This document shows, one piece after another, positions 431 through 39,777 of a stretch of 64,000 nucleotides of DNA. Source of the stretch: Tubulanus polymorphus (taxonomy: Eukaryota > Animalia > Nemertea); contig NC_134030.1 in NCBI RefSeq assembly GCF_964204645.1, positions 20,482,210 to 20,546,209 of the forward strand. The letters run 5' to 3'. The position numbers and the translations under genes are program-made. Below the pieces are notes generated by a model that saw only the letters and a program-made list of their open reading frames with translations, was not told the DNA's origin and did not search any database. The first letter of the stretch is position 1, and the number at the start of each line of letters is the position of its first letter.

Positions 431-845
431 ATGCAATCGACCGTCCGGTGAAGGTCATGTGGATACTCCAACACCACAGCAACAGGTTGATGATACAACA
501 TGCGAGATGTTAAGTATCTACGAAGAGCTTGATGATGACAGTGATTCCGATAATGTTTCAAATCCAGTCAGAAATATTAAAACTGGATTATTACATAACA
601 TACCAATTCACAAGGACATCGAAGCCGGGGCAGATACAACTGCATATATGGATATGGAAGCCGCGAAGGGCATAAATACAACTCCTTATATGGATATGGA
701 AGCCGCGAAGGGCATAGATACAACTCCTTACATGGATATGGAAGCCGTGAAGGGCATAGATACAACTCCTTACATGAATATGGAAGCCGCGAAGGGTATA
801 GATACAACTCCTTACATTGATATGGAAGCCGAGAAGAAAGAATAA
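431..845 (+). CDS. Gene A1 terminal exon: cytoplasmic tail with 5 YxxM motifs (YMDM x3, YMNM, YIDM) and SIYEEL; upstream exons lie outside the window
   Basis: Acceptor atttcag|A at 430/431, phase 2. The frame is open to TAA at 845. It contains a 42-bp/14-aa tandem repeat and is paralogous to 34828-35431. Confidence 0.85.
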
Positions 846-5299: not shown

Positions 5300-6716
5300 A
5301 ATCCCACAATAAGTTCAGCCAAAACGAGAAACTTGAATAGAAGAGTTATATATATTTGCGCAACGTTTCGGCTAAAGACTATTAGCCATCATCAGGCGTA
5401 CTGAGTACAGGAGAATATTACAAGATATTTATACAAGACCAAAACAATAGAAGCAGAGTGAGTGATTAAAATATTGAAAGGGGAATAGATTAAAGTAATG
5501 ACATAACAACTAGAAAACAATGCTAAAGTAAGCAAGGCAAACTAGGGGCAATGTAGATAAAAGTAATTAATAAACAAAGACACAAGCTAAAGTGATTAAA
5601 ACGGGAGGACAAGCTAAGGGGTAATCAAATAAAACAAAGAGAAGGAACATGAAAGGCGATAATCAGTGAGTGAGTGGAAACAAGCAAACTATGATAAAGG
5701 CAAAACAATGGAGGGAATTAGTATAACGGGGGTACAAGAGAAGCGAGAAATTTGGAGATCAAAATGTTGTGGGGGGAGAAACCGTTATTCAAATTAACAC
5801 AATTTTCCAAGTTTTCAATAATCAGGGCCGATTCCATAATGTGTCGTTTAATCTTTTCTGAACAGGGGAAAATTATGGAGGCATTTTCAAAATCAAAATT
5901 GTGGCTGGTTTCGTATACGTGATTGGCAACACCGCTTTCAGGCTTAAAATTCTTTACATCATTCTTATGTTCACGAATGCGCTTGTGTAAATCGCGTCCG
6001 GTTTCGCCGATATATATTTTGTTACAAACTTTACAGGGAATTTTATATACACCAATGTTCAGGGGTTCAATTTTGGGGGAGTTATGAGTAAGATTACGAC
6101 TAAGTTTGTTGTTATAAGTAAAAATGAGTTGTTTGTTTAAGAGATGGAGGGGAGTTTTAGATTTTTCCAGAAAAGGAACAAAAGGTACAATAATAGGCTG
6201 TTTACGCGCGCGGGTCCCTTGAGAGTGACTGAAATGTGAACGACGGGCTCTCAAGAGAGCTTTATTCAAAATGTCGTCGGGGTAAGCTAATTTATTAAGA
6301 GAGGTCTTGATCTGGGTTAGTTCATCATCCAAGAAAAGGGGGTCACAAATCCTTAATGCGCGAAGGAATAAGCTTTGGGCAACACTAAGTTTAATGTTAT
6401 GAGCGGTGAAGGAGAAATAATGTAGGTATACTCTCCCTAAACTTTGGTTACGATACGTTGATGATATTCTTGCCCTTATACCTTTTGACTTTGATATTGA
6501 TCAATTTCTCACATTTATTAACTCTTTTTATCCCTCCTTGAACTTCACATTTGAATTGGAAGTTAATGGGAAAATCCCTTTCCTTGATGTTTGTATACAC
6601 AATTGTTTGTCTTGTCTAAAATTCTCGGTTTATAGGAAACCTACCCACTCTGGAACATACCTACATTATTTCTCCTTCACCGCTCATAACATTAAACTTA
6701 GTGTTGCCCAAAGCTT
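5300..6716 (-). mobile_element. Penelope-like retroelement (GIY-YIG endonuclease ORF 5718-6332) with an inverted RT fragment at 6430-6716
   Basis: GVYKIPCKVCNKIYIGETGRDLHKRIREH matches the Penelope GIY-YIG signature. The + strand fragment reads WLRYVDD...FTFELEVNGKIPFLDV...VYRKPTH. 6370-6429 is an inverted copy of 6657-6716. Confidence 0.9.
5361..5396 (-). ncRNA. Hammerhead ribozyme core in the Penelope terminal repeat
   Basis: Minus strand reads CTGATGA-t-ggctaa(tagtct)ttagcc-GAAAC, i.e. the conserved CUGANGA/GAAA core with a perfect stem II. Confidence 0.75.
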
Positions 6717-6719
6717 GGA

Positions 6720-8556
<1,837 letters not shown>

Positions 8557-10665: not shown

Positions 10666-11222
10666 AGATTGAATATGTAGGGGGACCCAGATGATCAGAT
10701 CAGGCAACTATCTATATTTTTTTCCCTTTCTCATTCCTCTCTCCTTCTCCCAAAACTCATCAACAAAAAGAGAGAGGGATGGGAAGACGTCTAGATATTT
10801 CCAAACAAGCTTATAGGCTTAACAGCAAACCTCTCTTCCCTAAACTTACAAAGTCATGAGAGAACGGGACTTGTGTATGTAAGCGATAGATATACAAGCA
10901 CAGGTCTAAACAATCAGGCAGTTGCTTGCTTCTATTGTAGACTACCACAGTGCATGTTCAACCTGGGGCAAAAACCCACCCGGTAGCCAAGAATAATTAA
11001 ATATGCAATAAAGATAAATGCAGAAAATTGCGTCAATTGCTACAAAATATAACCAGGGTTGGGAAGCCCCAGGCCGAACTCGCGTGAACAAAGTCCACTA
11101 GGATATAAGTCACCCGGAGAACGACGAGTAAATTCCCAAACGCCCTATGTCAGATAAGTTCTAAGCGCGATAGAGTAAGTTATTTGTAAAGGGTCAAGGC
11201 AAAGAATTTCCAGTTTACTTAC

Positions 11223-11571
11223 TATGAACTTCAATCATATCAAACTCAACAGGTTTCGGATTTGTAGGATTTTCCTTTACAAGACATCTAAATGATGATC
11301 CATTGTGAAGTTTGGAATCTGCCTTGAATTTTAGCTGTGCGTAAACAAGTGCGTTCTGTTTGATATATCTGTGAAGTCGTATATCTCCAAAAACTGGTCC
11401 CCACGATTCAGAACCGCGTCTCTTCTGTTGAAAAATCAGCGTAGTCGTCGATTTTCCAACCCCTGTTCTGCATAGGTATTGTGTATCGACCCCCTCGAAT
11501 CTTATGTCCGGCCGTCCAATGGGACCCCGATAATTATCGATATAATAAGGTAATTCTGAAACATATTGTAA

Positions 11572-11620
<49 letters not shown>

Positions 11621-11793
11621 TGTCTGTCTGTCTGTGTCTGTGTGTGTGTCTGTGTGTGTCTGTGGCTGTGTGTGTGTGTCTGTGTGTGTGTGTGCGCGTG
11701 TGCGCGTGTGCGCGTGTGCGCGTGTGCCTTTGCCAGCGTGATATCCAGACAGAGTATCACAGGGATTATCGATAACAACCTCATTATTACCAT
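11223..11793 (-). CDS. Gene B1 5' part: signal peptide (ATG 11793), in-frame (CA)n-encoded His/Thr linker, Ig-like V domain (11223-11555)
   Basis: MVIMRLLSIIPVILCLDITLAK is followed by an uninterrupted frame into ELPYYIDNYRG...YLC...W...FRC...EVH|gtaagt. The V segment is 333 nt, as in B2. Confidence 0.8.
11577..11727. repeat. (TG)n/(TGTC)n/(CGTG)n compound microsatellite
   Basis: Directly visible in the sequence. Confidence 0.95.
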
Positions 11794-12133
11794 GTCCCCC
11801 ATTAGACATAACAGATTTAGGAAATCGCAGGTAATAATAACAGAAGACACCAGTCGTATGAATTCGAATCTCGTTATATAAGCATAGGCCTCACCATATG
11901 ATAGTCATCGGGTAAATGTTTATCTTCAAACGTTTTAATGCAATCAATTAGTTCAAATTTCTCGATTGAACCGGACAGACAGGCAAGTTAAAAATTTATC
12001 TAATAACAAACAACTAAACATTAAGATAGATAGATATACAACTCGTCATCGCGCATGTCAGAAGCTAGTCAGTCGCGCTGGCTGTCACGGCCTGGTCGTG
12101 TAGTGTACTAAAACGATAGAATGCAAGGATAGA
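11794..12133. promoter_or_regulatory. Putative bidirectional promoter / 5' UTR region between B1 and C1
   Basis: The divergent ATGs at 11793 (-) and 12134 (+) are only 340 bp apart. The B-proximal part is conserved at 39470-39730. Confidence 0.55.
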
Positions 12134-12221
12134 ATGGCCTTCAACCATTTCGTATATACCTGGACAGTCTTACTGCTGGTGATTCACGACACACGAGCGT
12201 CTCAAAAAAGTATTATTTCAG
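12134..12221 (+). CDS. Gene C1 exon 1: signal peptide MAFNHFVYTWTVLLLVIHDTRASQKSIIS
   Basis: ATG, hydrophobic core, phase-1 donor G|gtaggt. The paralog at 45818-45905 has the same length and keeps the frame. Not present in the ORF track. Confidence 0.8.
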
Positions 12222-12289
12222 GTAGGTCACTACTGTCATATCTATTGAAAGAATACATCGTTCTCCCAATTTCGCAGTGATTCGAACGC

Positions 12290-12560
12290 TGCATGTTTCT
12301 CCATCGCAGTGATTCAAACCTGATGACATCATGAGGCTCTGCCACGTTCCTCCCTCGGCCGGGTTTCGAACTTGATGACATCGTGAGACTCTGCCACGTT
12401 CCTCCCTCGGCCGGGATTCGAACTTGATGACATCGCGAGACTCTGCCACGTTCTTCCCTCGCACGGATTCGAACCTGATGCCAATGTGAGATTCAGCCAC
12501 GTTCCTCCTACCTGATGACGTCGTAAGACTCTGCCACGTGCCCCTCAAAAGGTTTTGAAC
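12290..12560. repeat. ~50-bp minisatellite in C1 intron 1 (about 5 degenerate units)
   Basis: Unit gatgacatcgtgagactctgccacgttcctccctcg..gggattcgaacct. Homologous arrays lie at ~15015-15125 and 45975-46858. Confidence 0.85.
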
Positions 12561-12738
12561 CGGTTGCTCTGTGCATATCTTCGATGGATTTACTTGACAA
12601 TGAAGGGAATAAATATCGAGTCATTCAATAGGCTCCACAAGTAATACAGACTGTACACAGGTCTTACAAGTAGGGCCTATAAATATGTCTAATACTGATC
12701 GCTTATAGATGAATTCTTAACTTACTTTTATATTTCAG

Positions 12739-13032
12739 CACCTTATGGAGTTGTACTGGAAAGCATGAATGTATTACTGGGTACACATTTATTATTGTCG
12801 CAGGAAGGTAAAACTGTTAATATTACTTGTAAACAAAGCAACGCTGCAGCGACTGGTGTACACTTCCAGCTTCACGAGAAAAATGCAGCAGGAGGACCCT
12901 GGACTCGAATACCTCTTACCTCATCTAAACCAGTGTGGACAATTTTACCCGATGCTGGAAAACAATATAGATGTGTGGCCAATAATTCAGCCGGAGCGAA
13001 AAGAAGTAAATTCTACAAATCGGATGTTATCA
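12739..13032 (+). CDS. Gene C1 exon 2: Ig domain P1
   Basis: 294 nt, phase 1-1. EGKTVNITC...W...DAGKQYRCVANNSAG is an I-set/C2-type Ig motif. Confidence 0.88.
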
Positions 13033-13869
13033 GTGAGTACCTTTGGTGGAAATACATTTCCCATGTAGGATGAAGCTAGTCGTCCTTGCGATGTTGGCCA
13101 TATCATACATGGTGCTTTAATATCACTTAAAATCTCCAGCTAATGTAATGGTACTTAAAAGTTGTCTACCCATGTTGTATCACTAACAATCTTCGCCAAT
13201 GTTGTGGGATTAAAGCTTCTACCTGTGTCGTGACTACTGAATCTCTTATATCGTGATCCGACTGGTCACCAATGTTGTACTACCTTATGCTACTAGTTCT
13301 TCGGTCTGCTTCTTCCTCGAGTTAGTTATTAAACACTTCTATCTGCTATGATCACGTTTTGCTTTCCATATTTTACCTCCTACTCGTTTCTTTCTCTGTT
13401 CCACTTTTCCTTCCCTTGAGCCAAAACCTTAGACGTATATACCTACCTAGTTCCCGCATTCCTCGAATACCTAAGCAATGACCACGTCATCTTCTAACCT
13501 GACCCTGGTTTGCTTAGTCCCAGTACTTCTATTCTACTCCCTCGACTAGTGCTAACCATCTCATATAATTCCTTATATTTCAAAATTAGGAAATAATGCT
13601 CTTCTCCCTTTCATACAAGCAGTTACCTTTCAGCGTGCGCACAAGCACACATTACACACACGCTGTGTACTCATACATTGGCTCTACAGTGCAATCAAAC
13701 GCATTAAGGAGCACTATGTCAGACAGAGAATATCATCAGGAATCCAGTGTAGCGGTTTATTTTGTTTACCTCCACCAGAAAAAATATTTTTGGGCCATTT
13801 CTATTTCTTACTTATTTAAGGTAAAAAGAAGATTTTTGGGCCAATTATTTCTTATTTATTTATTTTAAG

Positions 13870-14178
13870 GTATTAAGATAAATGAGTGTAAGCAGCTTGT
13901 TCAATCATTGGATTGTACTTGCAAAGCCGTTAGTAAGATCGGTGAAGCAAACTTGAACGTTGCATTTTATCCTAACGGATTCGAAGATAAACGTCTTGAT
14001 TTCTATTTGAGTCGGGCCCCAACGGAGCAAAAAGTGATAAAGAATGGAGTTATCAACAGAATTTCGTGGGATCTATCGACAATGAGGTTTGCCACTGCGA
14101 TTCAATGTCGTTTGTCGACGTACAATGGTAAAAAACCAGCAAATAGAATAGAACATCAACGTAAAGTGGACGTAACGT
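13870..14178 (+). CDS. Gene C1 exon 3: Ig-like domain Q1
   Basis: 309 nt, phase 1-1, ttttaag| ... |gtaagt. Reads LDCTC...IQCRL...KVDVT, with three paralogous copies in the window. Confidence 0.82.
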
Positions 14179-15301
14179 GTAAGTTTTGAACATTTCTATC
14201 AATGAACTAAACAGCAGTAAACCCGAAAAACACAACTGAACAGCTTTTAACAAATCAGCTTTTGTGGAATATTGTGCCGGTCTTTCGAGGTCCCCATTGT
14301 TGCGAGAATTTTCGCTCATTTTTGAAATATGAGTTTTGATTGAATATCAATTAGCTCTGCAGTCCCTTGGTGAATTTAATCATATAATCAGCAAAAAGGA
14401 AATGAAATGCAGATATGTGCCGAGTTCCTTGAACGCACCAATTTAGAGCAGTGACGATGAGAAACCAAGGACCGTATATTCTGGCCATTTCTAAATGTTT
14501 CAAGACTGCTAATCGGTAGTCAGTGCGGAATGTTTGGTTTTCTAAGAATAATTAGGGGTCGTAGGTTGTCATGATTTACATGAATTTCATGGATTCGAAC
14601 CCAACACCCGAACGGCCAGTTGACAGCAAACAACAGCCTAAGCAGTATTGTACTGGGGAACGTTCTTCGCGAAATCTAAACGGCCAATTTTCTCATCCAA
14701 GCAACTAAGCATAACTCCTTGCTTCTGATGCCAACAGCTATTAATAAGCACACGGATCACACTACTACCGATCTTACTCCTGTACGTACCGACGATAATT
14801 TGTTATTTATGATAGTAATTTAATGGTGTAGAGATTCGCGATGTCATCAATTCGAATCTGTCCTCATGAGGGAGGAACATGGTTGTATCTACGAGTTGAG
14901 ATGATTGCTCTTGGTAGAGTCGCGCGATGCCCACCAGATTCAAATCCCTAGCGTAGCACATTGTCTCTCTGCTTGAAAGGCGTAGCAGCGGTTAGCGATG
15001 GCCCAGGCCCCATTTGAACCTGATGGCAATGTGAGACTTTGCCACATTTCTCCGTCGGCAGGGATTCGGACCTGGCGACGATGTTAGACTCCCCCACATT
15101 CCTCCCTCAAAAGGTTTTGAACCTATTGCTCTGAGCATATCTTCGTTGGATTCATTTGACAATGAAGCGAATAAATATCGAGTCATCCAATAGGCTCCAC
15201 AAGTAATACAGACTGTACACAGGTCTTACAAGTAGGGCCTAATGAATATGTCTAATACTGATCGCTTATAGATGAATTCTTAACTTACTTTTATTATTCA
15301 G

Positions 15302-15595
15302 CACCTTATGGAGTTGTACTGGAAAGCATGAATGTATTACCGGGTACACATTTATTATTGTCGCAGGAAGGTAAAACTGTTAATATTACTTGTAAACAGC
15401 GCAACGCTGCAGCGACTGGTGTACAATTCCAGCTTCACGAGAAAAATGCAGCAGGAGGACCCTGGACTCGAATACCTCTTACCTCATCTAACCCAGTGTG
15501 GACAATTTTACCCGATGCTGGCAAACAATATAGATGTGTGGCCAATAATTCAGCCGGAGCGAAAAGAAGTAAATTCTACAAATCGGATGTTATCA
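15302..15595 (+). CDS. Gene C1 exon 4: Ig domain P2
   Basis: 294 nt, near-identical to 12739-13032, splice sites intact. Confidence 0.88.
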
Positions 15596-15861
15596 GTGAG
15601 TGCCTTTGGTGGAAATACATTTCCCATGTAGGATGAAGCTAGTCGTCCTTGCCATGTTGGTATTCTGGCCATAACCCTAACTGGACAAAAGCACAGATCC
15701 GCACCTCTTATAAATGGTGCTGTAATATCACTTAAAATCTCCACCTAATGTAATGGTACTTAAAAGTTCTCCGCCAATGCTGCTTCCACCTGTCGGCGGC
15801 GTGTGTGTATTTATAATTGAAATAAAAGTATACTATTATATAATGATATTATATTATACAG

Positions 15862-16170
15862 GTTTAAAGATAAATGAGTGTAAGCAGCTTGTTCAATCAT
15901 TGGATTGTACTTGTAAAGCCGTTAGTAAGATCGGTGATGCAAACTTGAACGTGGCATTTTATCCTAACGGATTCGAAGATAAACGTCTTGATTTCTATTT
16001 GAGTCGGGCCCCAACGGAGCAAAAAGTGATAAAGAATGGAGTTATCAACAGAATTTCGTGGGATCTATCGACAATGAGGTTTGCCACTGCGATTCAATGT
16101 CGTTTGTCGACGTACAATGGTAAAAAACCAGCAAATAGAATAGAACATCAACGTAAAGTGGACGTAACGT
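15862..16170 (+). CDS. Gene C1 exon 5: Ig-like domain Q2
   Basis: 309 nt, near-identical to 13870-14178, splice sites intact. Confidence 0.82.
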
Positions 16171-16523
16171 GTAAGTTTTGAACATTTCTATCAATGAACT
16201 AAACAGCAGTAAACCCGAAAACAACAACTGGAGCAACTTTTAACAAATTTTTCAAGGTTCTGTTTTCTTGGAATTTCTTTTAGTTCCATATTACTACGCT
16301 TTTATGTTTCAGCTTGCGCATTAATTCTCCGATTTACTCTTAAATTAACTCGAAACATTGCACTATAATGCCGAATATCAGACTTGGGCCGATGTATATA
16401 TTTAGCGTTTGATTATGCTGGTGTAATGAACAGTGATGAAGACTCAGAGGTCGTTAGTTGTAGAATCTATCATGACACAAGTTCATGCTTGTTATTTCAT
16501 CCACGTTTGTTTCGTTTGTTCAG

Positions 16524-16790
16524 ATTTTAGGCCCGATTTCAAGAAAAGCGGTGAAAATGAAACGAATGCAGCGTATATCGTAACCATATATAGTTATCCG
16601 ATGACGAAAGAAGTTACATGTGACCCTCCAGCTGTCGTTCAAAATCTATCGAACTCACAGTGGAATATAACGATACCAATTGTAGACAGTACCACAACTG
16701 ACTATAGCGGGCAGTGTTTGGCAGATGGTAAAAATGAAAACGTCATCGATGTCGCTGGTTATCATCGAAATGCTCCCACTGGTGAAGCGG
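16524..16790 (+). CDS. Gene C1 exon 6: membrane-proximal Ig-like domain D
   Basis: 267 nt, phase 1-1. VTCDPPA...WNITIPIVDSTTTDYSGQC is homologous to the B-gene D exons. Confidence 0.82.
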
Positions 16791-17002
16791 GTAAGATCCA
16801 AACAAATCATGAACCGGATTTTACTTTATTTCTCTGAACAATCGGATGATTTTTTGTATGATTTAATGAATTAGATTCGCTCGCGATGCATGTTTGTTAC
16901 AAATACGAGAAGTTGCAAAACATCTATTTATGCTAGCCTAATAATCGATACAAATACTGATTTATTTAGACTTGAGAATTTTATTTGCTGATGTTTGGAT
17001 AG

Positions 17003-17101
17003 GAGGAAATGGAGAAACTGTGGGAATTGCGTCATCTATTTTGGGATTCACGTTATTTCTCGTTTTGACGATCTCGTTTGTACTTTGGTACTGTGGCAAT
17101 T
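17003..17101 (+). CDS. Gene C1 exon 7: transmembrane helix GGNGETVGIASSILGFTLFLVLTISFVLWYCGN
   Basis: 99 nt, phase 1-1, tag| ... |gtaagt, with a hydrophobic stretch of ~23 aa. Confidence 0.8.
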
Positions 17102-17181
17102 GTAAGTTATACTTGAAACTATCATCGAATTAGAAAAGAACTATTACAGAAATAAAAGACTTTTTTATTGCTTATTTTCAG

Positions 17182-17232
17182 TGCGTTTCGTCAAAAACCC
17201 TAAGAAAAAAGAACAGCCTAATGGTGGAAATG
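17182..17232 (+). CDS. Gene C1 exon 8: basic juxtamembrane segment LRFVKNPKKKEQPNGGN
   Basis: 51 nt, phase 1-1, tttcag| ... |gtaagt. Confidence 0.75.
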
Positions 17233-21800: not shown

Positions 21801-23667
21801 ATACATGTAGTACCAATACCAATTCATGTTACGTGTCCATTAGTTTAAGGACCTAATGATTCACCACTCCAATGACGTATACGAAATATACTAAAGCTGA
21901 TATCAATCAGACGGTGGTTGTTCGGTGTTAGGAGCGGTTCGCGTCGCTGTTAATTCAATCTATAAACATAACGTATTTGTTGTGCTACAGAAGTCGATAC
22001 TTGAAAAAAAAACATCTCTATGATCATGACTTGCTAGTGGGTGCGCTTTTACGGCGACGATTCCTCACCCGAGTCCAGCATGACATATAGCGCCAGTGTC
22101 CGCCGAACTGCCGCGATGATAAAACATAGGCTATCAACACGAAAAGAGTTAAAGAATTTTTCTAAGGCATTAGAGAGGTGGCTAGCCACCCTATTCAACC
22201 CAATGTTCTAGGAATGAATTTCAATTTATTACAATTTTTTAGTGAGTAATAACGACTTGGTTTGAAGACGCGTTCGAAAAGTAGATTATTATTGCATTGA
22301 TAAATCTATTCGTTTAGAAGGAATAAATGTTGAATGATGTATGAGGTTTGATTTGTTGCACAAATATGTTTTGCTCGCATGCCATCGAAATGATTATCCG
22401 GGTTGCTCCCCTGTCCCAGGGGTGTCACTCAGGCATCAAACCTTAACTATGAATATTGTTTGTTAAAGTCAGAATTACTGTTTTCTTTTTCAGATCAGCT
22501 ATTCCTCACTTCCCATTATCAGCACCTGATTGCTGCCAATACCACGGGGCTGACTGAACCAACGCTGCTTGAGAACATAAGAACTAATCCGTTGCTCCAC
22601 ACGGATATGAATCGGTGGTGAGTAGATTTGTTTTTAACAGAAAATGTCATGTATCAAAATTAAATCATAAGTTTTAATGGTGAGCGTCGCAATTCTATTT
22701 TTCTAGATGAGCCTTTCTACCTCCTCGTGACTACAGCAACGACAGCTCATTGGGCTTTAACCCTTCCCAACATCTCCACTCAAGACCTAATTGCTGCCTA
22801 AACCAGCCTGGCCCAAACATACAATCCTCATGACGTAATTGCTGTTGGGATGTGAGAACTGTAGCCTGGATGTTACATCTCCCGAAGAAAAGTTAACTGA
22901 TCGAAAAAATCCGTGCAGCTTCGCTCATGAATTGGTGAGTAGACATTTTAACTGTTTGTTGTATCGGAAGTTAGGTCGGGTCGTTACAGCAAACTCAGAT
23001 ACAGTTAGATCCTTACACTCCTCTCGAATTAACTTGTGACCAATTTGTGTTTGAGTTTAGGTGATGATTCAAGTTTTTCGAATGAAGCTGATATTCTATT
23101 GTTGAAATTATTATGAAGTTAGGTCGGGTTAAAGCTTATCAAACAGACTTTCGTCACAAAGATGCAGCGGAATTTCTCTAAACTCGAATCGTTTTGTAAC
23201 CAGTGATGTATAGTGGGAGTTACGGTGATCATTCTAATCACTCCCGTATTCAAGAAGTATTTTTTGTTTCAATGGTTTTAAAGATCTAATATTTGTAAAC
23301 AAGTAGATAACGATGATGAGACTCGAAAGCATTTGCCATAAGTGGAGTGTCAAAATGTTGGGCAATTTGTCAGATAAAGAAACCTTTGATCTATTCGATA
23401 AACTTAATGACGAAATATTATCAGTAAAACCGACTTTTTATCAACCGGTTCATTTGTCCAGGACATTCATACAGTATTTTTAGAATAGTCGAACTAGGGC
23501 TTGTGACTGTGGTCACATATCTTAAGTTTAAAAATTTGTTTAGAAAAATCAGTCTCCCTTGTCTCGCGAAAGTGCGCTGATAAGATATATCGGTTTTTGT
23601 AATTACACAATATTATTTCTGATCGATTCGAATTGTATTGCAAAATTTAGACAGTCCCGCGTGCACA

Positions 23668-28339: not shown

Positions 28340-28584
28340 GTATGGCAGGGGACACTGATCCGTGCTAATCTGTAAAGTTTTCTCTGGGAGTTTGAAATCA
28401 AAATCTGAGGATGTTGAGTAACTGGTCTGTACTGGTCTGCATCGTGTTACTGCAGCTGGGAAACGTACACAATGCAGAATTGTCTGGAGTGAAGGGAAAG
28501 AGAAGTAAGTTATCCATATATATATAAAATCCTTCAAAAAAGTTTCAAATAACATGTAATCATTCGACAAACCATTCGTTTCAG

Positions 28585-28923
28585 GTGATCTACCATTCAT
28601 TGGCCCGTACCCTGCTCCCGATGGTAAGCCGGACAGGAGAAACCAAGGACAGAGGGTAGATTATTTCTGTAGAATTAGGGCTGGAAAGTCAGATACTACT
28701 TTGATATTTGAACAGAAGAGACGAGATTCTGAATCATGGGGACCAGTTCTTGGGCATATGCGATTTCACAGAGGTGTCACAGATGACGCATTCGTTTACG
28801 CTAAGTTAGAATTCAATGCAGATTCCAAACTTCACAATGGAACGAATTTTAGATGTCTTGTAAAGGAAAATCCTACAAATCCTGAACCTGCTCAGTTTGA
28901 TCGACTTGAAGTTCTTAATATCG
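28585..28923 (+). CDS. Gene A2 exon: Ig-like V domain
   Basis: 339 nt, phase 1-1. YFC...LIFEQKRRDSESWGPV...HNGTNFRCLVKENPTNP is paralogous to the B1 and B2 V exons. Confidence 0.85.
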
Positions 28924-32363: not shown

Positions 32364-32389
32364 ATCATTCAACTTTGAATCCCTCATTG
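32364..32389 (+). CDS. Gene A2 micro-exon DHSTLNPSL
   Basis: 26 nt, tttcag| ... |gtgagt. It converts phase 1 to phase 0 exactly as needed to join the V exon to the stalk/TM exon. Confidence 0.7.
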
Positions 32390-32688
32390 GTGAGTATCTG
32401 GGAATAAGCCTGAGTCAAATTGAACCCGCACAACTGTTGAACTGGATTCAAAGTCAAATTAAATCCACTTTGTGGAACTGGATCCAAGTCAAATTAAACC
32501 CACACAACTGTGGAACTGGGTCCGGATTCAAATTAAACCTACACAATTGTGGAATATGGTCCAGAACTAAGTTAAACCCGCTCAACTGGGTTCGGTATCG
32601 AATAAGGATGGGCTTAATCAAATTGAATTCATGATAATCAATTGATCATTTAAAATCGTATTCTCAGATTTTTGTTTATGTTCAATAG

Positions 32689-32942
32689 AGTGACTACATC
32701 AATCAGACTACATTGGGTCCCAGTAACCGGGTCGCACCTGACCAGATCACTGCTCGGACTACAAGTGACCAGATCACAACTGATCGGACTACGACTGACC
32801 AGACTACTGCTGATCAGACTGCAACTGACCAGATTCCAACTGATCGGTCTACATCCGACTGGACCAATGTGATACTGTACATCACCAGCGGAGTAACTGG
32901 ATGTATTTTAATCATCATCATGGCTGAAATCATCATGCGCAG
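32689..32942 (+). CDS. Gene A2 exon: Thr-rich stalk (15-bp repeat, DQxTT-like) and TM helix VILYITSGVTGCILIIIMAEIIMRR
   Basis: Phase 0-2. The donor AG|gtatga matches the phase-2 acceptor of the tail exon. Confidence 0.82.
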
Positions 32943-34827: not shown

Positions 34828-35431
34828 ATGCAATCGACCGTCCGGTGAAGGTCATGTGGATACTTCAACACCACAGCAACAAGTTGATGACACAGCAAAC
34901 GATATGTTAAGTATCTACGAAGAGCTTGATGACGACAGTGATTCCGATAATGTTTCAAATCCAGTTAGAAATATAGAAACTGGATTACTACATAACATGC
35001 CAATTCACAAGGACATCGAAGCCGGGGCAGATACAACTGCATATATGGATATGGAAGCCGGGAAGGGCAAAGATACAACTCCTTACATGGATATGGAAGC
35101 CGGGAAGGGCAAAGATACAACTCCGTACATGGATATGGGAGCCGGGATAGAAGAGGACACATACATGAGCACTGAAGGCGCGATACGCGATGATACAACC
35201 CCTGTCCCTAGCGCTGAGGGAGACAAAGATGCAGATCAATACATGAATCCTGAAGCTTTGGAGACGACGTATCTTCAGTTGACGGAAGATACCGATGAAC
35301 CTGTGGAAGATGATGTTGAACTTTATTCTTATGCTACTGTTGAATACAAAGCTCCTTACATGAATATGGAAGCCGCGAAGGGCATAGATACAACTCCTTA
35401 CATTGATATGGAAGCCGAGAAGAAAGAATAA
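34828..35431 (+). CDS. Gene A2 terminal exon: acidic tyrosine-rich cytoplasmic tail (5 YxxM plus YEEL, YMST, YMNP, YLQL, YSYATV)
   Basis: Acceptor atttcag|A, phase 2, open to TAA. Paralog of 431-845 with 63 extra aa. Confidence 0.87.
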
Positions 35432-37173: not shown

Positions 37174-37316
37174 TTAATTATACAAAAGAAATACAAAGAG
37201 TCCACCGAATGCACCACCAGCAACATTAACTCCATTACCAGATCCTCCGTTAGTATTAACTCCAATAGCATTAACTGCATTTGTATTGGTATCATAGGTA
37301 TTGACATTGTTTTTCC
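37174..37316 (-). CDS. Gene B2 terminal exon: Asn/Gly-rich spacer and short hydrophobic end ...GGSGNGVNVAGGAFGGLFVFLLYN*
   Basis: Phase-1 acceptor. The four B2 exons sum to 774 nt (257 aa). Homologous to the B1 exon at 2438-2541. Confidence 0.7.
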
Positions 37317-37629
37317 CTTCGAAAAAAATGCAAAATAAACAAAATGACATAAAAAATAAGGATAGAAATATTAAGCTGAAACAACCAACAAACTTTCAAC
37401 ATCAGTATCTCATTATTAAGTCTACATTACGAGTTGGCAAACACGGACTGGCTTTTACTCAGGTTTGCTATTAGTAACTTTAAATTTCGGATGCATGTCA
37501 CCACATCCAGTACTTTTGACAGACATTTATCGAAGTCATTTTGTTATGAATGGTTGTTAATTCTGTTAGATATAGCGAGTATACTCGAAGCGAATGCAAA
37601 TTTTATTCCCAGTAATAAATGAAACTAAC

Positions 37630-37857
37630 CTGGTTCATCATATCGACCGAGATCACGATGGCGAATGTCAATGAAGCGTTTACCATTCAGCAGACACCTC
37701 CCTCTATAGTCAGTTGTGATACTGTTCACTATCGGTACCGAAACCATCCATTTGTCGTTTGATTGTTTCCAAACATTGGCTGGAGGGTCACATGTTAGTT
37801 GATTAGCCTCTGCATTCCTAGTTATGGATACATTATGGTACCGAGCTGTTGCAAGGT
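37630..37857 (-). CDS. Gene B2 exon 3: short Ig-like domain D
   Basis: 228 nt, phase 1-1, ttacag| ... |gttagt, open frame. Not present in the ORF track. Confidence 0.82.
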
Positions 37858-38328
37858 CTGTAAGGAAAAATAAAATAAAAAACTAAGAATTAATCCTATT
37901 GTCTATGCTGGCTGATTCGGGCCATGTAAATTTTTTTTTTCGTTCTCCACGAAAACGCACAAAAACAAATATGACCGCGCAAAAACAAATATTACCGCGC
38001 AAAAACAAACTTTTAACGCGCAAAAACGAAATAATCCGTTTTTGCGCGCTGAAAGTTTGTTTTTGCGCGGGCGACCAGCTTTGAATGACCAGCTGACTGG
38101 ACGACCGGCCGACTGGATGACTCTGATCGGAGGACTGGTCGACTGGCCGACTGGATGACTCGATGACTCGATGACTGAATGACCGTGGTGACCGGCCGAC
38201 AAGATGACTGGGTGACTGGGTGATCGGAGGACCGGTCGACTGGTCGAATGAGCAAGTAGGCATTTGTGTTATAGCCAGTTATTCAGTAATAAAGTGTCAT
38301 TGATCACTTAAGTGGATTCTGGCACTTA

Positions 38329-38543
<215 letters not shown>

Positions 38544-38795
38544 GCCATGGAAAGTTCCAGACCTGTTGCACCTGGAGTTGTTGAATTCGTCCAAACAATA
38601 ACTGTTAGTTTGGATAAAACGATCAAGTTTCTTCAGGAGAACAATATAATTCGAAGCAGCTGTCACTGCATTTACTGAATATGTTCCTACACCCTTGCAC
38701 TATTACTCCGTATTCTACACTTGGGCCGTTCTAAGCGCGATAGAGTAAGTTATTTGTAAAGGGTCAATGCTACGAATTTCAGTTTAGTTACTTAC

Positions 38796-39128
38796 TATGA
38801 ACTTCAATCGGATCAAACTGAAGAGGTTTCGGATTTGTAGGATTTTCCTTTACAAGACATCTAAAAGTCGTTCCATTGTGAAATTTGGAATCCGCCTTGA
38901 ATTTCAGATTAGCGAAAACAAGTCCGCTCTCTGTGACATATGTGTGAAGTCGAATATGCCCAAGAACTGGTCCCCATGATTCTAAACCTCGTCTCTTCTG
39001 TTCAAAAATCAGCGTAGTCGTCGATTTCCCAACCATCGTTCTGCAAAGGTATCGTGTCTCGAACCCCTCGAATCTTATGTCCGGCCGTCCAATGGGACCC
39101 CGATAAGTATCGATATAATAAGGAAATT
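38796..39128 (-). CDS. Gene B2 exon 2: Ig-like V domain
   Basis: 333 nt, phase 1-1, tttcag| ... |gtaagt. Confidence 0.85.
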
Positions 39129-39399
39129 CTGAAAAATATTGTTATTGATATGGACTTTCATTCTTTATTTTGCTACACGTGTAGTCTTCGCCCACTCCTT
39201 CGGCGTTTCTTCATCATTCTAATATTTCAACTTCTAGGATTTCACACACAGGCGATTTTTTTCAGCGCTCTATCAAAAAGTGATCATGTAAACTGCTTAC
39301 ATCATGTAATAATCGCCAGAGGGTCAAACCCCCTGTCCGTTAATTCATAATACTTACAGATTGATTGCAGTCAAAAAGAGTTTCATCAGTTCAACATAC

Positions 39400-39469
39400 C
39401 TGTCTTTGCCAGCATGATATCCAGGCAGAGTATCACGCAGATTATCGATAACAACCTCGTTATTACCAT
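39400..39469 (-). CDS. Gene B2 exon 1: signal peptide MVITRLLSIICVILCLDIMLAKT
   Basis: ATG, hydrophobic core, phase-1 donor G|gtatgt. Paralogous to 11728-11793. Confidence 0.82.
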
Positions 39470-39777
39470 GTCACCTATTACACATAACAGATCTAGGAAA
39501 TCGCGGGTAATAATAACAGCAGACACCAGTCGTATGAATTCGAATCTCGTTATATCAGCATAGGCCTCACCATATGATAGTTATCACGTAATTGTTTATC
39601 TTTAAATGTTTTACTGTAACGACAATGCAATCAATATGTTCAAATTTCTGGATTGAACCGGAAAAACAGGAAAGTTCAAAGTTTATCTATTAACAGACAG
39701 CTAAACATTGACTTCTCATTGCGCAGGTCGGGAGCTTGTTAACTGGCAGATTACCCAGTCGTGCAGGCCGTTTCAAG

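What the first reader, a model, noticed from the sequence alone, without database searches (positions are those of the whole stretch)
34828..35431. Cytoplasmic tail built from a minisatellite of YxxM motifs and combined with ITIM-like motifs
Seen: a 42-bp unit encodes DTTPYMDMEAxKGx, giving five YxxM motifs per tail, including YMNM, plus SIYEEL and (in A2) TTYLQL and YSYATV in acidic context. Established: pYxxM binds PI3K p85 SH2 domains, YMNM is the CD28 motif that also binds Grb2, and S/I/V/LxYxxL/V is the ITIM consensus. Inference: this is a non-catalytic tyrosine-phosphorylated receptor with multivalent PI3K docking and a possible phosphatase brake. That is unusual for an invertebrate Ig receptor.
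Basis: partly seen in the sequence, partly recalled or inferred. Interest (0 to 1): 0.85.

Follow-up and report, generated by a model that had tools for sequence, protein, structure and literature searches.

The report
Ribbon-worm receptor with repeated PI3K docks
This ribbon-worm cell-surface receptor has an inner tail carrying five copies of a short tyrosine signal that recruits the enzyme PI3K in vertebrates, and about 40 related genes carry 1 to 19 copies, but nobody has tested whether the copies work and the proposed 'brake' motifs are weak.

Summary
Observation confirmed. 34828-35431 is the last exon of a five-exon gene of the nemertean Tubulanus polymorphus (RefSeq LOC141906813, 438 aa): signal peptide, ONE Ig domain, Thr-rich stalk, transmembrane helix, 200-aa acidic tail, no kinase. 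The splice to 32942 is in phase and matches RefSeq; no RNA reads were available. The tail has five YxxM, as three plus two 42-bp units split by a 65-codon block. About 40 paralogous tail exons exist, with 1-19 YxxM. The ITIM claim is weak: SIYEEL meets the consensus in 4 of 26 tails, elsewhere YEDP/YDEL (Src/Nck-like). YLQL...YATV, 20 residues apart, looks more like a two-site SHP2 dock, which may activate rather than brake. On chromosome C6, 19 of 20 such genes lie just upstream of a second Ig-receptor family without YxxM arrays, reminiscent of Botryllus FF/FcoR pairs. Best reading: non-catalytic PI3K-docking receptor or co-receptor, working like IRS-1/HER3/CD28; untested. The scan found this family before on other DNA.

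The parts
28411..28504 (+). Gene A2 exon 1: start codon and signal peptide (phase 1 donor)
   Evidence: residues 1-31 of RefSeq protein P0009
28585..28923 (+). Exon 2: single divergent Ig-fold domain (Cys, Trp, Cys core)
   Evidence: AlphaFold pLDDT 84.7; only Ig-fold hits, best Z 10.8
32364..32389 (+). Exon 3: 26-bp micro-exon (phase 1 to 0)
   Evidence: residues 146-153 of P0009
32689..32942 (+). Exon 4: Ser/Thr-rich stalk (stalk 36% S+T, built from 15-bp repeats) and transmembrane helix at about 32872-32934 with a Glu near its inner end; phase 2 donor
34828..35431 (+). Exon 5: whole cytoplasmic tail, 200 aa, 25% Asp+Glu, 12 tyrosines
34910..34927 (+). SIYEEL: fits ITIM consensus here; conserved in the family as hydrophobic-Y-E/D-E/D, more like a Src-family/Nck site
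   Evidence: the reading as Src/Nck site is from own knowledge
35030..35155 (+). 42-bp units 1-3, three YMDM, 14 residues apart
35156..35344 (+). Non-repeat block absent from paralog A1, shared with other paralogs: YMST, YMNP, YLQL and YATV (the last two 20 residues apart)
35345..35428 (+). 42-bp units 4-5: YMNM and YIDM
431..845 (+). Tail exon of paralog A1 (RefSeq LOC141907547): five contiguous units, five YxxM
12133..17232 (+). Neighbour gene C1 (separate gene): signal peptide, Ig and other ectodomain exons, TM exon about 17003-17101; no YxxM array; 3' end unresolved
37180..39700 (-). Neighbour gene B2 (approximate ends): same Ig family plus one more domain and a hydrophobic C-terminus, GPI-anchor-like, no tail
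   Evidence: relative P0021
45809..48952 (+). Neighbour gene C2, first exons (approximate start); follows A2 on the same strand, first Ig exon 12.9 kb after the A2 tail start

Best explanation
A2 is a non-catalytic type I receptor or co-receptor: one fast-evolving Ig domain on a mucin-like stalk, with a disordered acidic tail that acts as a built-in docking protein. Inferred mechanism: ligand binding or clustering lets a Src-family or receptor tyrosine kinase phosphorylate the tail (the YEEL site as a likely primer). Neighbouring pYxxM motifs engage the two SH2 domains of p85 and activate class IA PI3K/Akt. YMNM and YMNP may add Grb2, and the YLQL/YATV pair may bind and activate SHP2 in members that carry that block. 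Unequal crossing-over in the 42-bp coding repeat sets the number of docks per gene. Shown: gene structure, fold, motif counts, selective constraint, family and gene pairing. Inferred: phosphorylation, binding partners, immune role.
For: Exon model equals RefSeq P0009 exon by exon. 67 distinct units: Y 93% and +3 M 96% conserved even though both codons were masked when units were picked; +1 M only 76% and replaced mainly by I/V. Event counts on a spanning tree: 5.4 amino-acid changes at Y and +3 M against 58 elsewhere, binomial p=0.0016; dN/dS-like 0.16 against 0.52; +1 M 7.8 events against +3 M 2.0, same ATG codon. Tail dN/dS 0.30-0.35 among close paralogs. The listed DNA-unit matches fall in tail exons. 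p85 iSH2 gene present. p85 binds multiple pYXXM of HER3 (PMC8449365) and YXXM in the Drosophila InR tail (PMC7991905); two-site SHP2 activation (PMC2747914).
Against: No RNA or protein evidence obtained: three runs were DNA, the possible RNA run gave nothing. No binding data. Units are related by duplication and conversion, so the p-value is approximate, and the loci were found with a query that contained the motifs. Thr2 and Asp7 are also fairly conserved. Several paralogs keep only one YxxM, too few for two-site p85 binding in cis. The ligand and kinase are unknown.
Confidence: 0.6

Rival explanations
1. The repeats are YxxPhi sorting signals read unphosphorylated by clathrin adaptors (AP-2/AP-3), making A2 an endocytic or fast-recycling receptor; a CTLA-4-like dual use with p85 is possible.
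For: YxxM is a YxxPhi motif, and YEEL, YLQL and YATV also fit (own knowledge; motifs). A single-Ig, mucin-stalk design suits uptake receptors.
Against: +3 Met is almost never replaced by Leu, Phe or Val, which AP-2 accepts; only ATA and ACC variants were seen. One or two motifs suffice for sorting, but arrays reach 19.
Confidence: 0.13
2. Dual activating/inhibitory receptor with a true ITIM brake: SIYEEL recruits SHP/SHIP and dampens signalling.
For: SIYEEL meets the consensus in A2 and its three closest paralogs; two others end in VTYxNL. The YLQL...YATV block is conserved in several paralogs.
Against: One strict match is at chance level (P=0.15). The homologous site is YEDP/YDEL in most paralogs. 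Two-site SHP2 binding in Gab proteins is an activating arrangement (PMC2747914).
Confidence: 0.12
3. A general SH2 scaffold in adhesion, growth or guidance rather than immunity, phosphorylated in trans by a receptor tyrosine kinase such as the insulin receptor (IRS-like role at the membrane).
For: Acidic-context YMXM is the IRS-1 type motif (own knowledge). Top fold hits include adhesion proteins Rst and SYG-1/2.
Against: About 40 copies, tandem turnover, fast Ig divergence (59% identity to the nearest paralog; branch lengths 0.42-0.47 against 0.02-0.16 for TM/tail) and neighbours with NACHT domains point to recognition or immunity. Fold hits do not separate Ig classes.
Confidence: 0.1
4. The array is a by-product of an unstable minisatellite in a tolerant disordered tail, and the motifs have no function.
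For: Unit number varies freely (1-19); some tails are cut short by stops that leave units outside the frame.
Against: Position-specific constraint on Y and +3 M; frame kept over tails up to 385 aa; unit confined to tail exons.
Confidence: 0.05

Closest known systems
Botryllus FF/FcoR receptor pairs (PMC12582321)
   Same: Invertebrate Ig-superfamily type I receptors in clusters; a tyrosine-motif gene sits next to a partner gene, and pairs duplicate together.
   Different: FcoR carry ITIM, hemITAM and core motifs, and the paper states that YxNM was not found; three Ig plus Sushi ectodomain; co-expression shown. Here YxxM arrays, one Ig plus stalk, pairing only genomic, no sequence relation found.
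Hydractinia Alr family (10.1101/2022.03.04.482883)
   Same: About 40 divergent Ig receptors, mostly in one chromosomal region, poorly detected by Pfam, with exon shuffling and tyrosine motifs.
   Different: Alr have V-set, I-set and Fn3-like domains and ITAM/ITIM tails with a genetic link to allorecognition; A2 has no ITAM, no Fn3-like exon and no functional data.
HER3/ErbB3 tail, IRS-1, Gab/DOS, Drosophila InR C-terminal extension (PMC8449365, PMC2747914, PMC7991905)
   Same: Several YxxM for p85 in one disordered tail, with Grb2-type sites and a two-site SHP2 dock in the docking proteins.
   Different: Those are kinases, pseudokinases or cytosolic adaptors with unique-sequence motifs in single-copy genes. 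Here a kinase-less Ig receptor builds them from a coding minisatellite across a large gene family.
CD28 / DAP10 / CD19 / TIM-type receptors (own knowledge)
   Same: Non-catalytic, YMNM or YxNM for p85 and Grb2; single Ig plus mucin stalk resembles TIM and CD300; TM acidic residue as in DAP10.
   Different: One or two motifs only; no homology detected. The TM Glu is limited to A2's subgroup and the neighbour C1 has no basic TM residue.
Oyster CgIgR (PMC6994640)
   Same: Lophotrochozoan Ig receptor signalling through a tyrosine motif.
   Different: Five Ig domains and one ITAM recruiting Syk; A2 has no ITAM.

Membership tests
Immunoglobulin superfamily type I receptor | Ig-fold ectodomain | tested here: met
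   pLDDT 84.7 model; 224 chains at Z>=8, top 50 all Ig-fold entries. No Pfam hit for this domain itself; V, I or C2 set not resolved.
Immunoglobulin superfamily type I receptor | Signal peptide, one TM helix, tail joined in frame | tested here: met
   Splice phases and RefSeq model; no RNA junction seen.
YxxM/p85-docking receptors (CD28, HER3, IRS-1 type) | Cytoplasmic YxxM under constraint | tested here: met
YxxM/p85-docking receptors (CD28, HER3, IRS-1 type) | Phosphorylation-dependent p85 binding and Akt activation | not testable with these tools
   Only the presence of a p85-type gene was checked.
ITIM inhibitory receptors | Conserved [SIVL]xYxx[LV] motif | tested here: inconclusive
   One match in A2, at chance level, kept in 4 of 26 tails.
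ITIM inhibitory receptors | SHP/SHIP recruitment that inhibits signalling | not testable with these tools
   Needs experiment.
ITAM receptors (Alr ITAM members, CgIgR) | Yxx[LI]x6-12Yxx[LI] | tested here: not met
   No ITAM in any of the 18 proteins scanned.
Hydractinia Alr | V-set + I-set + Fn3-like ectodomain and sequence homology | tested here: not met
   Single Ig plus stalk; all full-domain profile hits that were named are Tubulanus proteins.
Botryllus FF/FcoR-type cognate pairs | Adjacent gene pairs duplicated together | tested here: met
   19 of 20 single-Ig tail genes on C6 are followed within 15 kb by a C-type gene on the same strand; not independent events, and the six C9 4.2-5.1 Mb genes have no detected partner.
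Botryllus FF/FcoR-type cognate pairs | Co-expression and heterodimerisation | not testable with these tools
   No RNA data.
Receptor tyrosine kinases | Cytoplasmic kinase domain | tested here: not met
   No Pfam family in the tail.

The most novel reading that the evidence does not exclude
A spiralian paired-receptor complex in which each YxxM-array gene is the signalling co-receptor of the adjacent multi-Ig receptor (short, helical or NACHT-LRR tail), GPI-type members act as decoys or ligands, and repeat number (1-19) is a heritable gain control on PI3K output. This would be a convergent counterpart of Botryllus FF/FcoR that uses PI3K docks instead of ITAM/ITIM.
Probability: 0.2. Interest if true: 0.82.

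Novelty: new variant of a known kind. Interest (0 to 1): 0.55.

Why it matters
Described invertebrate Ig-receptor clusters signal through ITAM, hemITAM or ITIM. A family of about 40 genes that instead carries 1-19 p85-type docks built by a coding minisatellite would add PI3K co-stimulation-type signalling to invertebrate recognition systems. It would also give a natural series for testing how SH2-site valency sets signal strength, in a phylum for which my searches found no immune-receptor study.

Tried and rejected
Linking the tail to the Ig exons at 12-17 kb: rejected, those form gene C1 with its own signal peptide and TM exon, and A2 has its own start at 28411. RNA proof of the junction: none, runs X2-X4 are genomic and X5 laid nothing. 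Sequence searches of the Ig domain in PDB, Pfam and the Atlas gave nothing usable; only the fold search identified it. Positive selection in the Ig domain: not shown, dN/dS 0.55-0.66. PLAT identity of the P0018 ectodomain, suspected by eye: inconclusive (no Pfam hit, pLDDT 51, no fold match; only weak relatives are borderline PLAT). SHP2, Grb2 and Src genes were not searched.

Full report
Observation. The stretch 34828-35431 follows an AG acceptor and holds a 200-codon open frame ending in TAA. It has 12 tyrosines, five of them in YxxM (three YMDM, one YMNM, one YIDM), plus SIYEEL, TTYLQL and YSYATV as described. Five YxxM arise in 0.034% of composition-shuffled tails, whereas one strict ITIM match arises in 15%. 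The five units are not contiguous here: three units (from 35030) and two units (from 35345) flank a block of about 65 codons that the paralogous tail at 431-845 lacks.

Gene and organism. Protein searches returned only proteins of the palaeonemertean Tubulanus polymorphus. I built the gene from splice sites and phases: signal peptide 28411-28504, one Ig-like exon 28585-28923, a 26-bp micro-exon 32364-32389, stalk plus TM 32689-32942, and the tail. Each exon's translation lies in order in RefSeq protein LOC141906813 (P0009, 438 aa). The TM donor and tail acceptor are both phase 2, as in most paralogs where the TM exon lay in the fetched flank. The RefSeq model is a prediction whose read support I cannot see. 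The sequencing runs laid here were genomic, and the one possible RNA run laid nothing, so the junction is strongly supported but not directly observed. The ectodomain has no Pfam hit but folds confidently (pLDDT 84.7) and matches only Ig-fold structures (best Z 10.8, 96 aligned, rmsd 2.4). The Ig class is unresolved. The Ig exons at 12-17 kb belong to a separate gene.

Family. The tail exon has 71 matches that collapse to about 40 loci on C6 (17.5-22.8 Mb), C9, C11 and C19. In 26 tails read in full, YxxM number runs from 1 to 19. The listed DNA-unit matches fall in these exons. The same TM-tail module also sits behind other ectodomains: P0013, P0014 and P0004, and P0018, which does not match the Ig profile. 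No full-domain relative outside Tubulanus was found among 1.84 billion representatives; other hits were short repeated stretches in long proteins.

Are the motifs selected? Units were collected with the Tyr and +3 Met codons masked. Among 67 distinct units, Tyr was kept in 93% (21 synonymous against 5 changed) and +3 Met in 96%, the two highest values. The +1 Met, with the same codon, was kept in 76% and changed mostly to Ile or Val. On a spanning tree of units, Tyr and +3 Met took 5.4 of 63 amino-acid changes against an expected share of 23% (p=0.0016). The test is approximate because units share history. It matches what p85 SH2 domains prefer (pY, hydrophobic, x, Met; own knowledge), and a p85 iSH2 gene is present.

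The ITIM claim. The first tyrosine is present across the family as hydrophobic-Y-acid-acid (YEEL, YEDP, YDEL) and fits the ITIM consensus only in A2's four-gene subgroup. From my own knowledge this resembles Src-family or Nck sites. YLQL and YATV fail the strict consensus but recur together, 18-20 residues apart, in several paralogs. That suggests a two-site SHP2 dock as in Gab proteins, where it activates SHP2 (PMC2747914). A brake is possible but not the best reading.

Neighbourhood. The same Ig domain occurs in two other gene types. B genes are short with a hydrophobic, GPI-like end (two in this window, minus strand). C genes are multi-Ig TM receptors whose tails are short, long and helical, or NACHT-containing, without YxxM arrays. 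On C6, 19 of 20 single-Ig tail genes are followed within 15 kb by a C gene on the same strand, including a run of ten tandem A-C cassettes. These are duplications of a cassette, not independent events, and six C9 genes have no detected partner. The Ig domain diverges much faster than the TM and proximal tail among close paralogs, but dN/dS of 0.55-0.66 does not show positive selection. This layout fits a recognition or immune cluster. That is inference.

Mechanism. Most likely, clustering leads to tail phosphorylation by a Src-family or receptor kinase, two-site p85 binding to units 14 residues apart, and PI3K/Akt output, with Grb2 and SHP2 inputs in some members and repeat number setting valency (confidence 0.6). 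Rivals are AP-2-type sorting signals, a true ITIM dual receptor, a non-immune IRS-like scaffold, and a neutral repeat.

Comparison. It works like HER3, IRS/Gab or the Drosophila InR tail (PMC8449365, PMC2747914, PMC7991905) but has no kinase. It is organised like Hydractinia Alr (10.1101/2022.03.04.482883) and Botryllus FF/FcoR (PMC12582321), but is not a member of either: no ITAM, different ectodomain, no homology, and FcoR are reported to lack YxNM. Ig-NACHT receptors like the C-type neighbours are described in sea cucumber (PMC8699970). I found no paper on this nemertean family. Earlier agents of this scan described sister genes with 12 and 19 motifs; I reproduced those counts. This copy adds the constraint test, the weak ITIM and the pairing count.

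Verdict. Real, lineage-specific new variant of tyrosine-motif Ig receptors; function untested; interest 0.55.

Noticed in passing
window 32413-32588: 39-bp intronic repeat that is a very high-copy genome-wide element (summed contig depth above 10,000 against about 17 for unique DNA in run X2).
   Followed up: no
window 32692-32713: One contig of a second sample (X2) differs by five clustered changes that alter three stalk codons, towards the sequence of paralog P0002; possible allele or gene conversion.
   Followed up: no
window 11218-11850, minus strand: In gene B1 the signal peptide reads in frame through a (CA)n microsatellite into the Ig exon, where B2 has an intron.
   Followed up: partly
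window 22496-22618: Possible cytoplasmic exon of gene C1 containing SHYQHL, an ITIM-consensus match; exon status unverified.
   Followed up: no
G000:C6 18.35-18.45 Mb and 22.26-22.37 Mb; C9 0.30-0.32 Mb: C-type genes predicted by RefSeq as Ig-TM-NACHT receptors (P0019, P0025); about 18 intact NACHT exons of this family genome-wide, some far from detected Ig exons.
   Followed up: partly
G000:C6:19029522-19033120, minus strand (P0018): The YxxM tail is attached to a non-Ig, possibly PLAT-like ectodomain; identity inconclusive.
   Followed up: partly
L003-L007, L009 (C6 18.2-18.5 and 22.23-22.25 Mb): A subgroup with other ectodomains has tails cut by stops before the last units, keeps one YxxM, and lies 14-30 kb downstream of NACHT exons.
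   Followed up: partly
G000:C6:22784904-22786950: A tail exon with a 682-codon open frame and units spaced at 96-bp multiples; not fetched.
   Followed up: no
window 32926-32928: Glu in the TM helix, shared only by A2's subgroup (P0001, P0002, P0008); no basic partner residue seen in the C1 helix.
   Followed up: partly
window 5718-8126, minus strand mainly: Fragments of reverse-transcriptase and endonuclease-like retroelement ORFs inside the long intron of gene B1; judged by eye.
   Followed up: no
window 12467-16248: Internal tandem duplication of the Ig1 and D2 exon pair in gene C1 (86-97% DNA identity).
   Followed up: no
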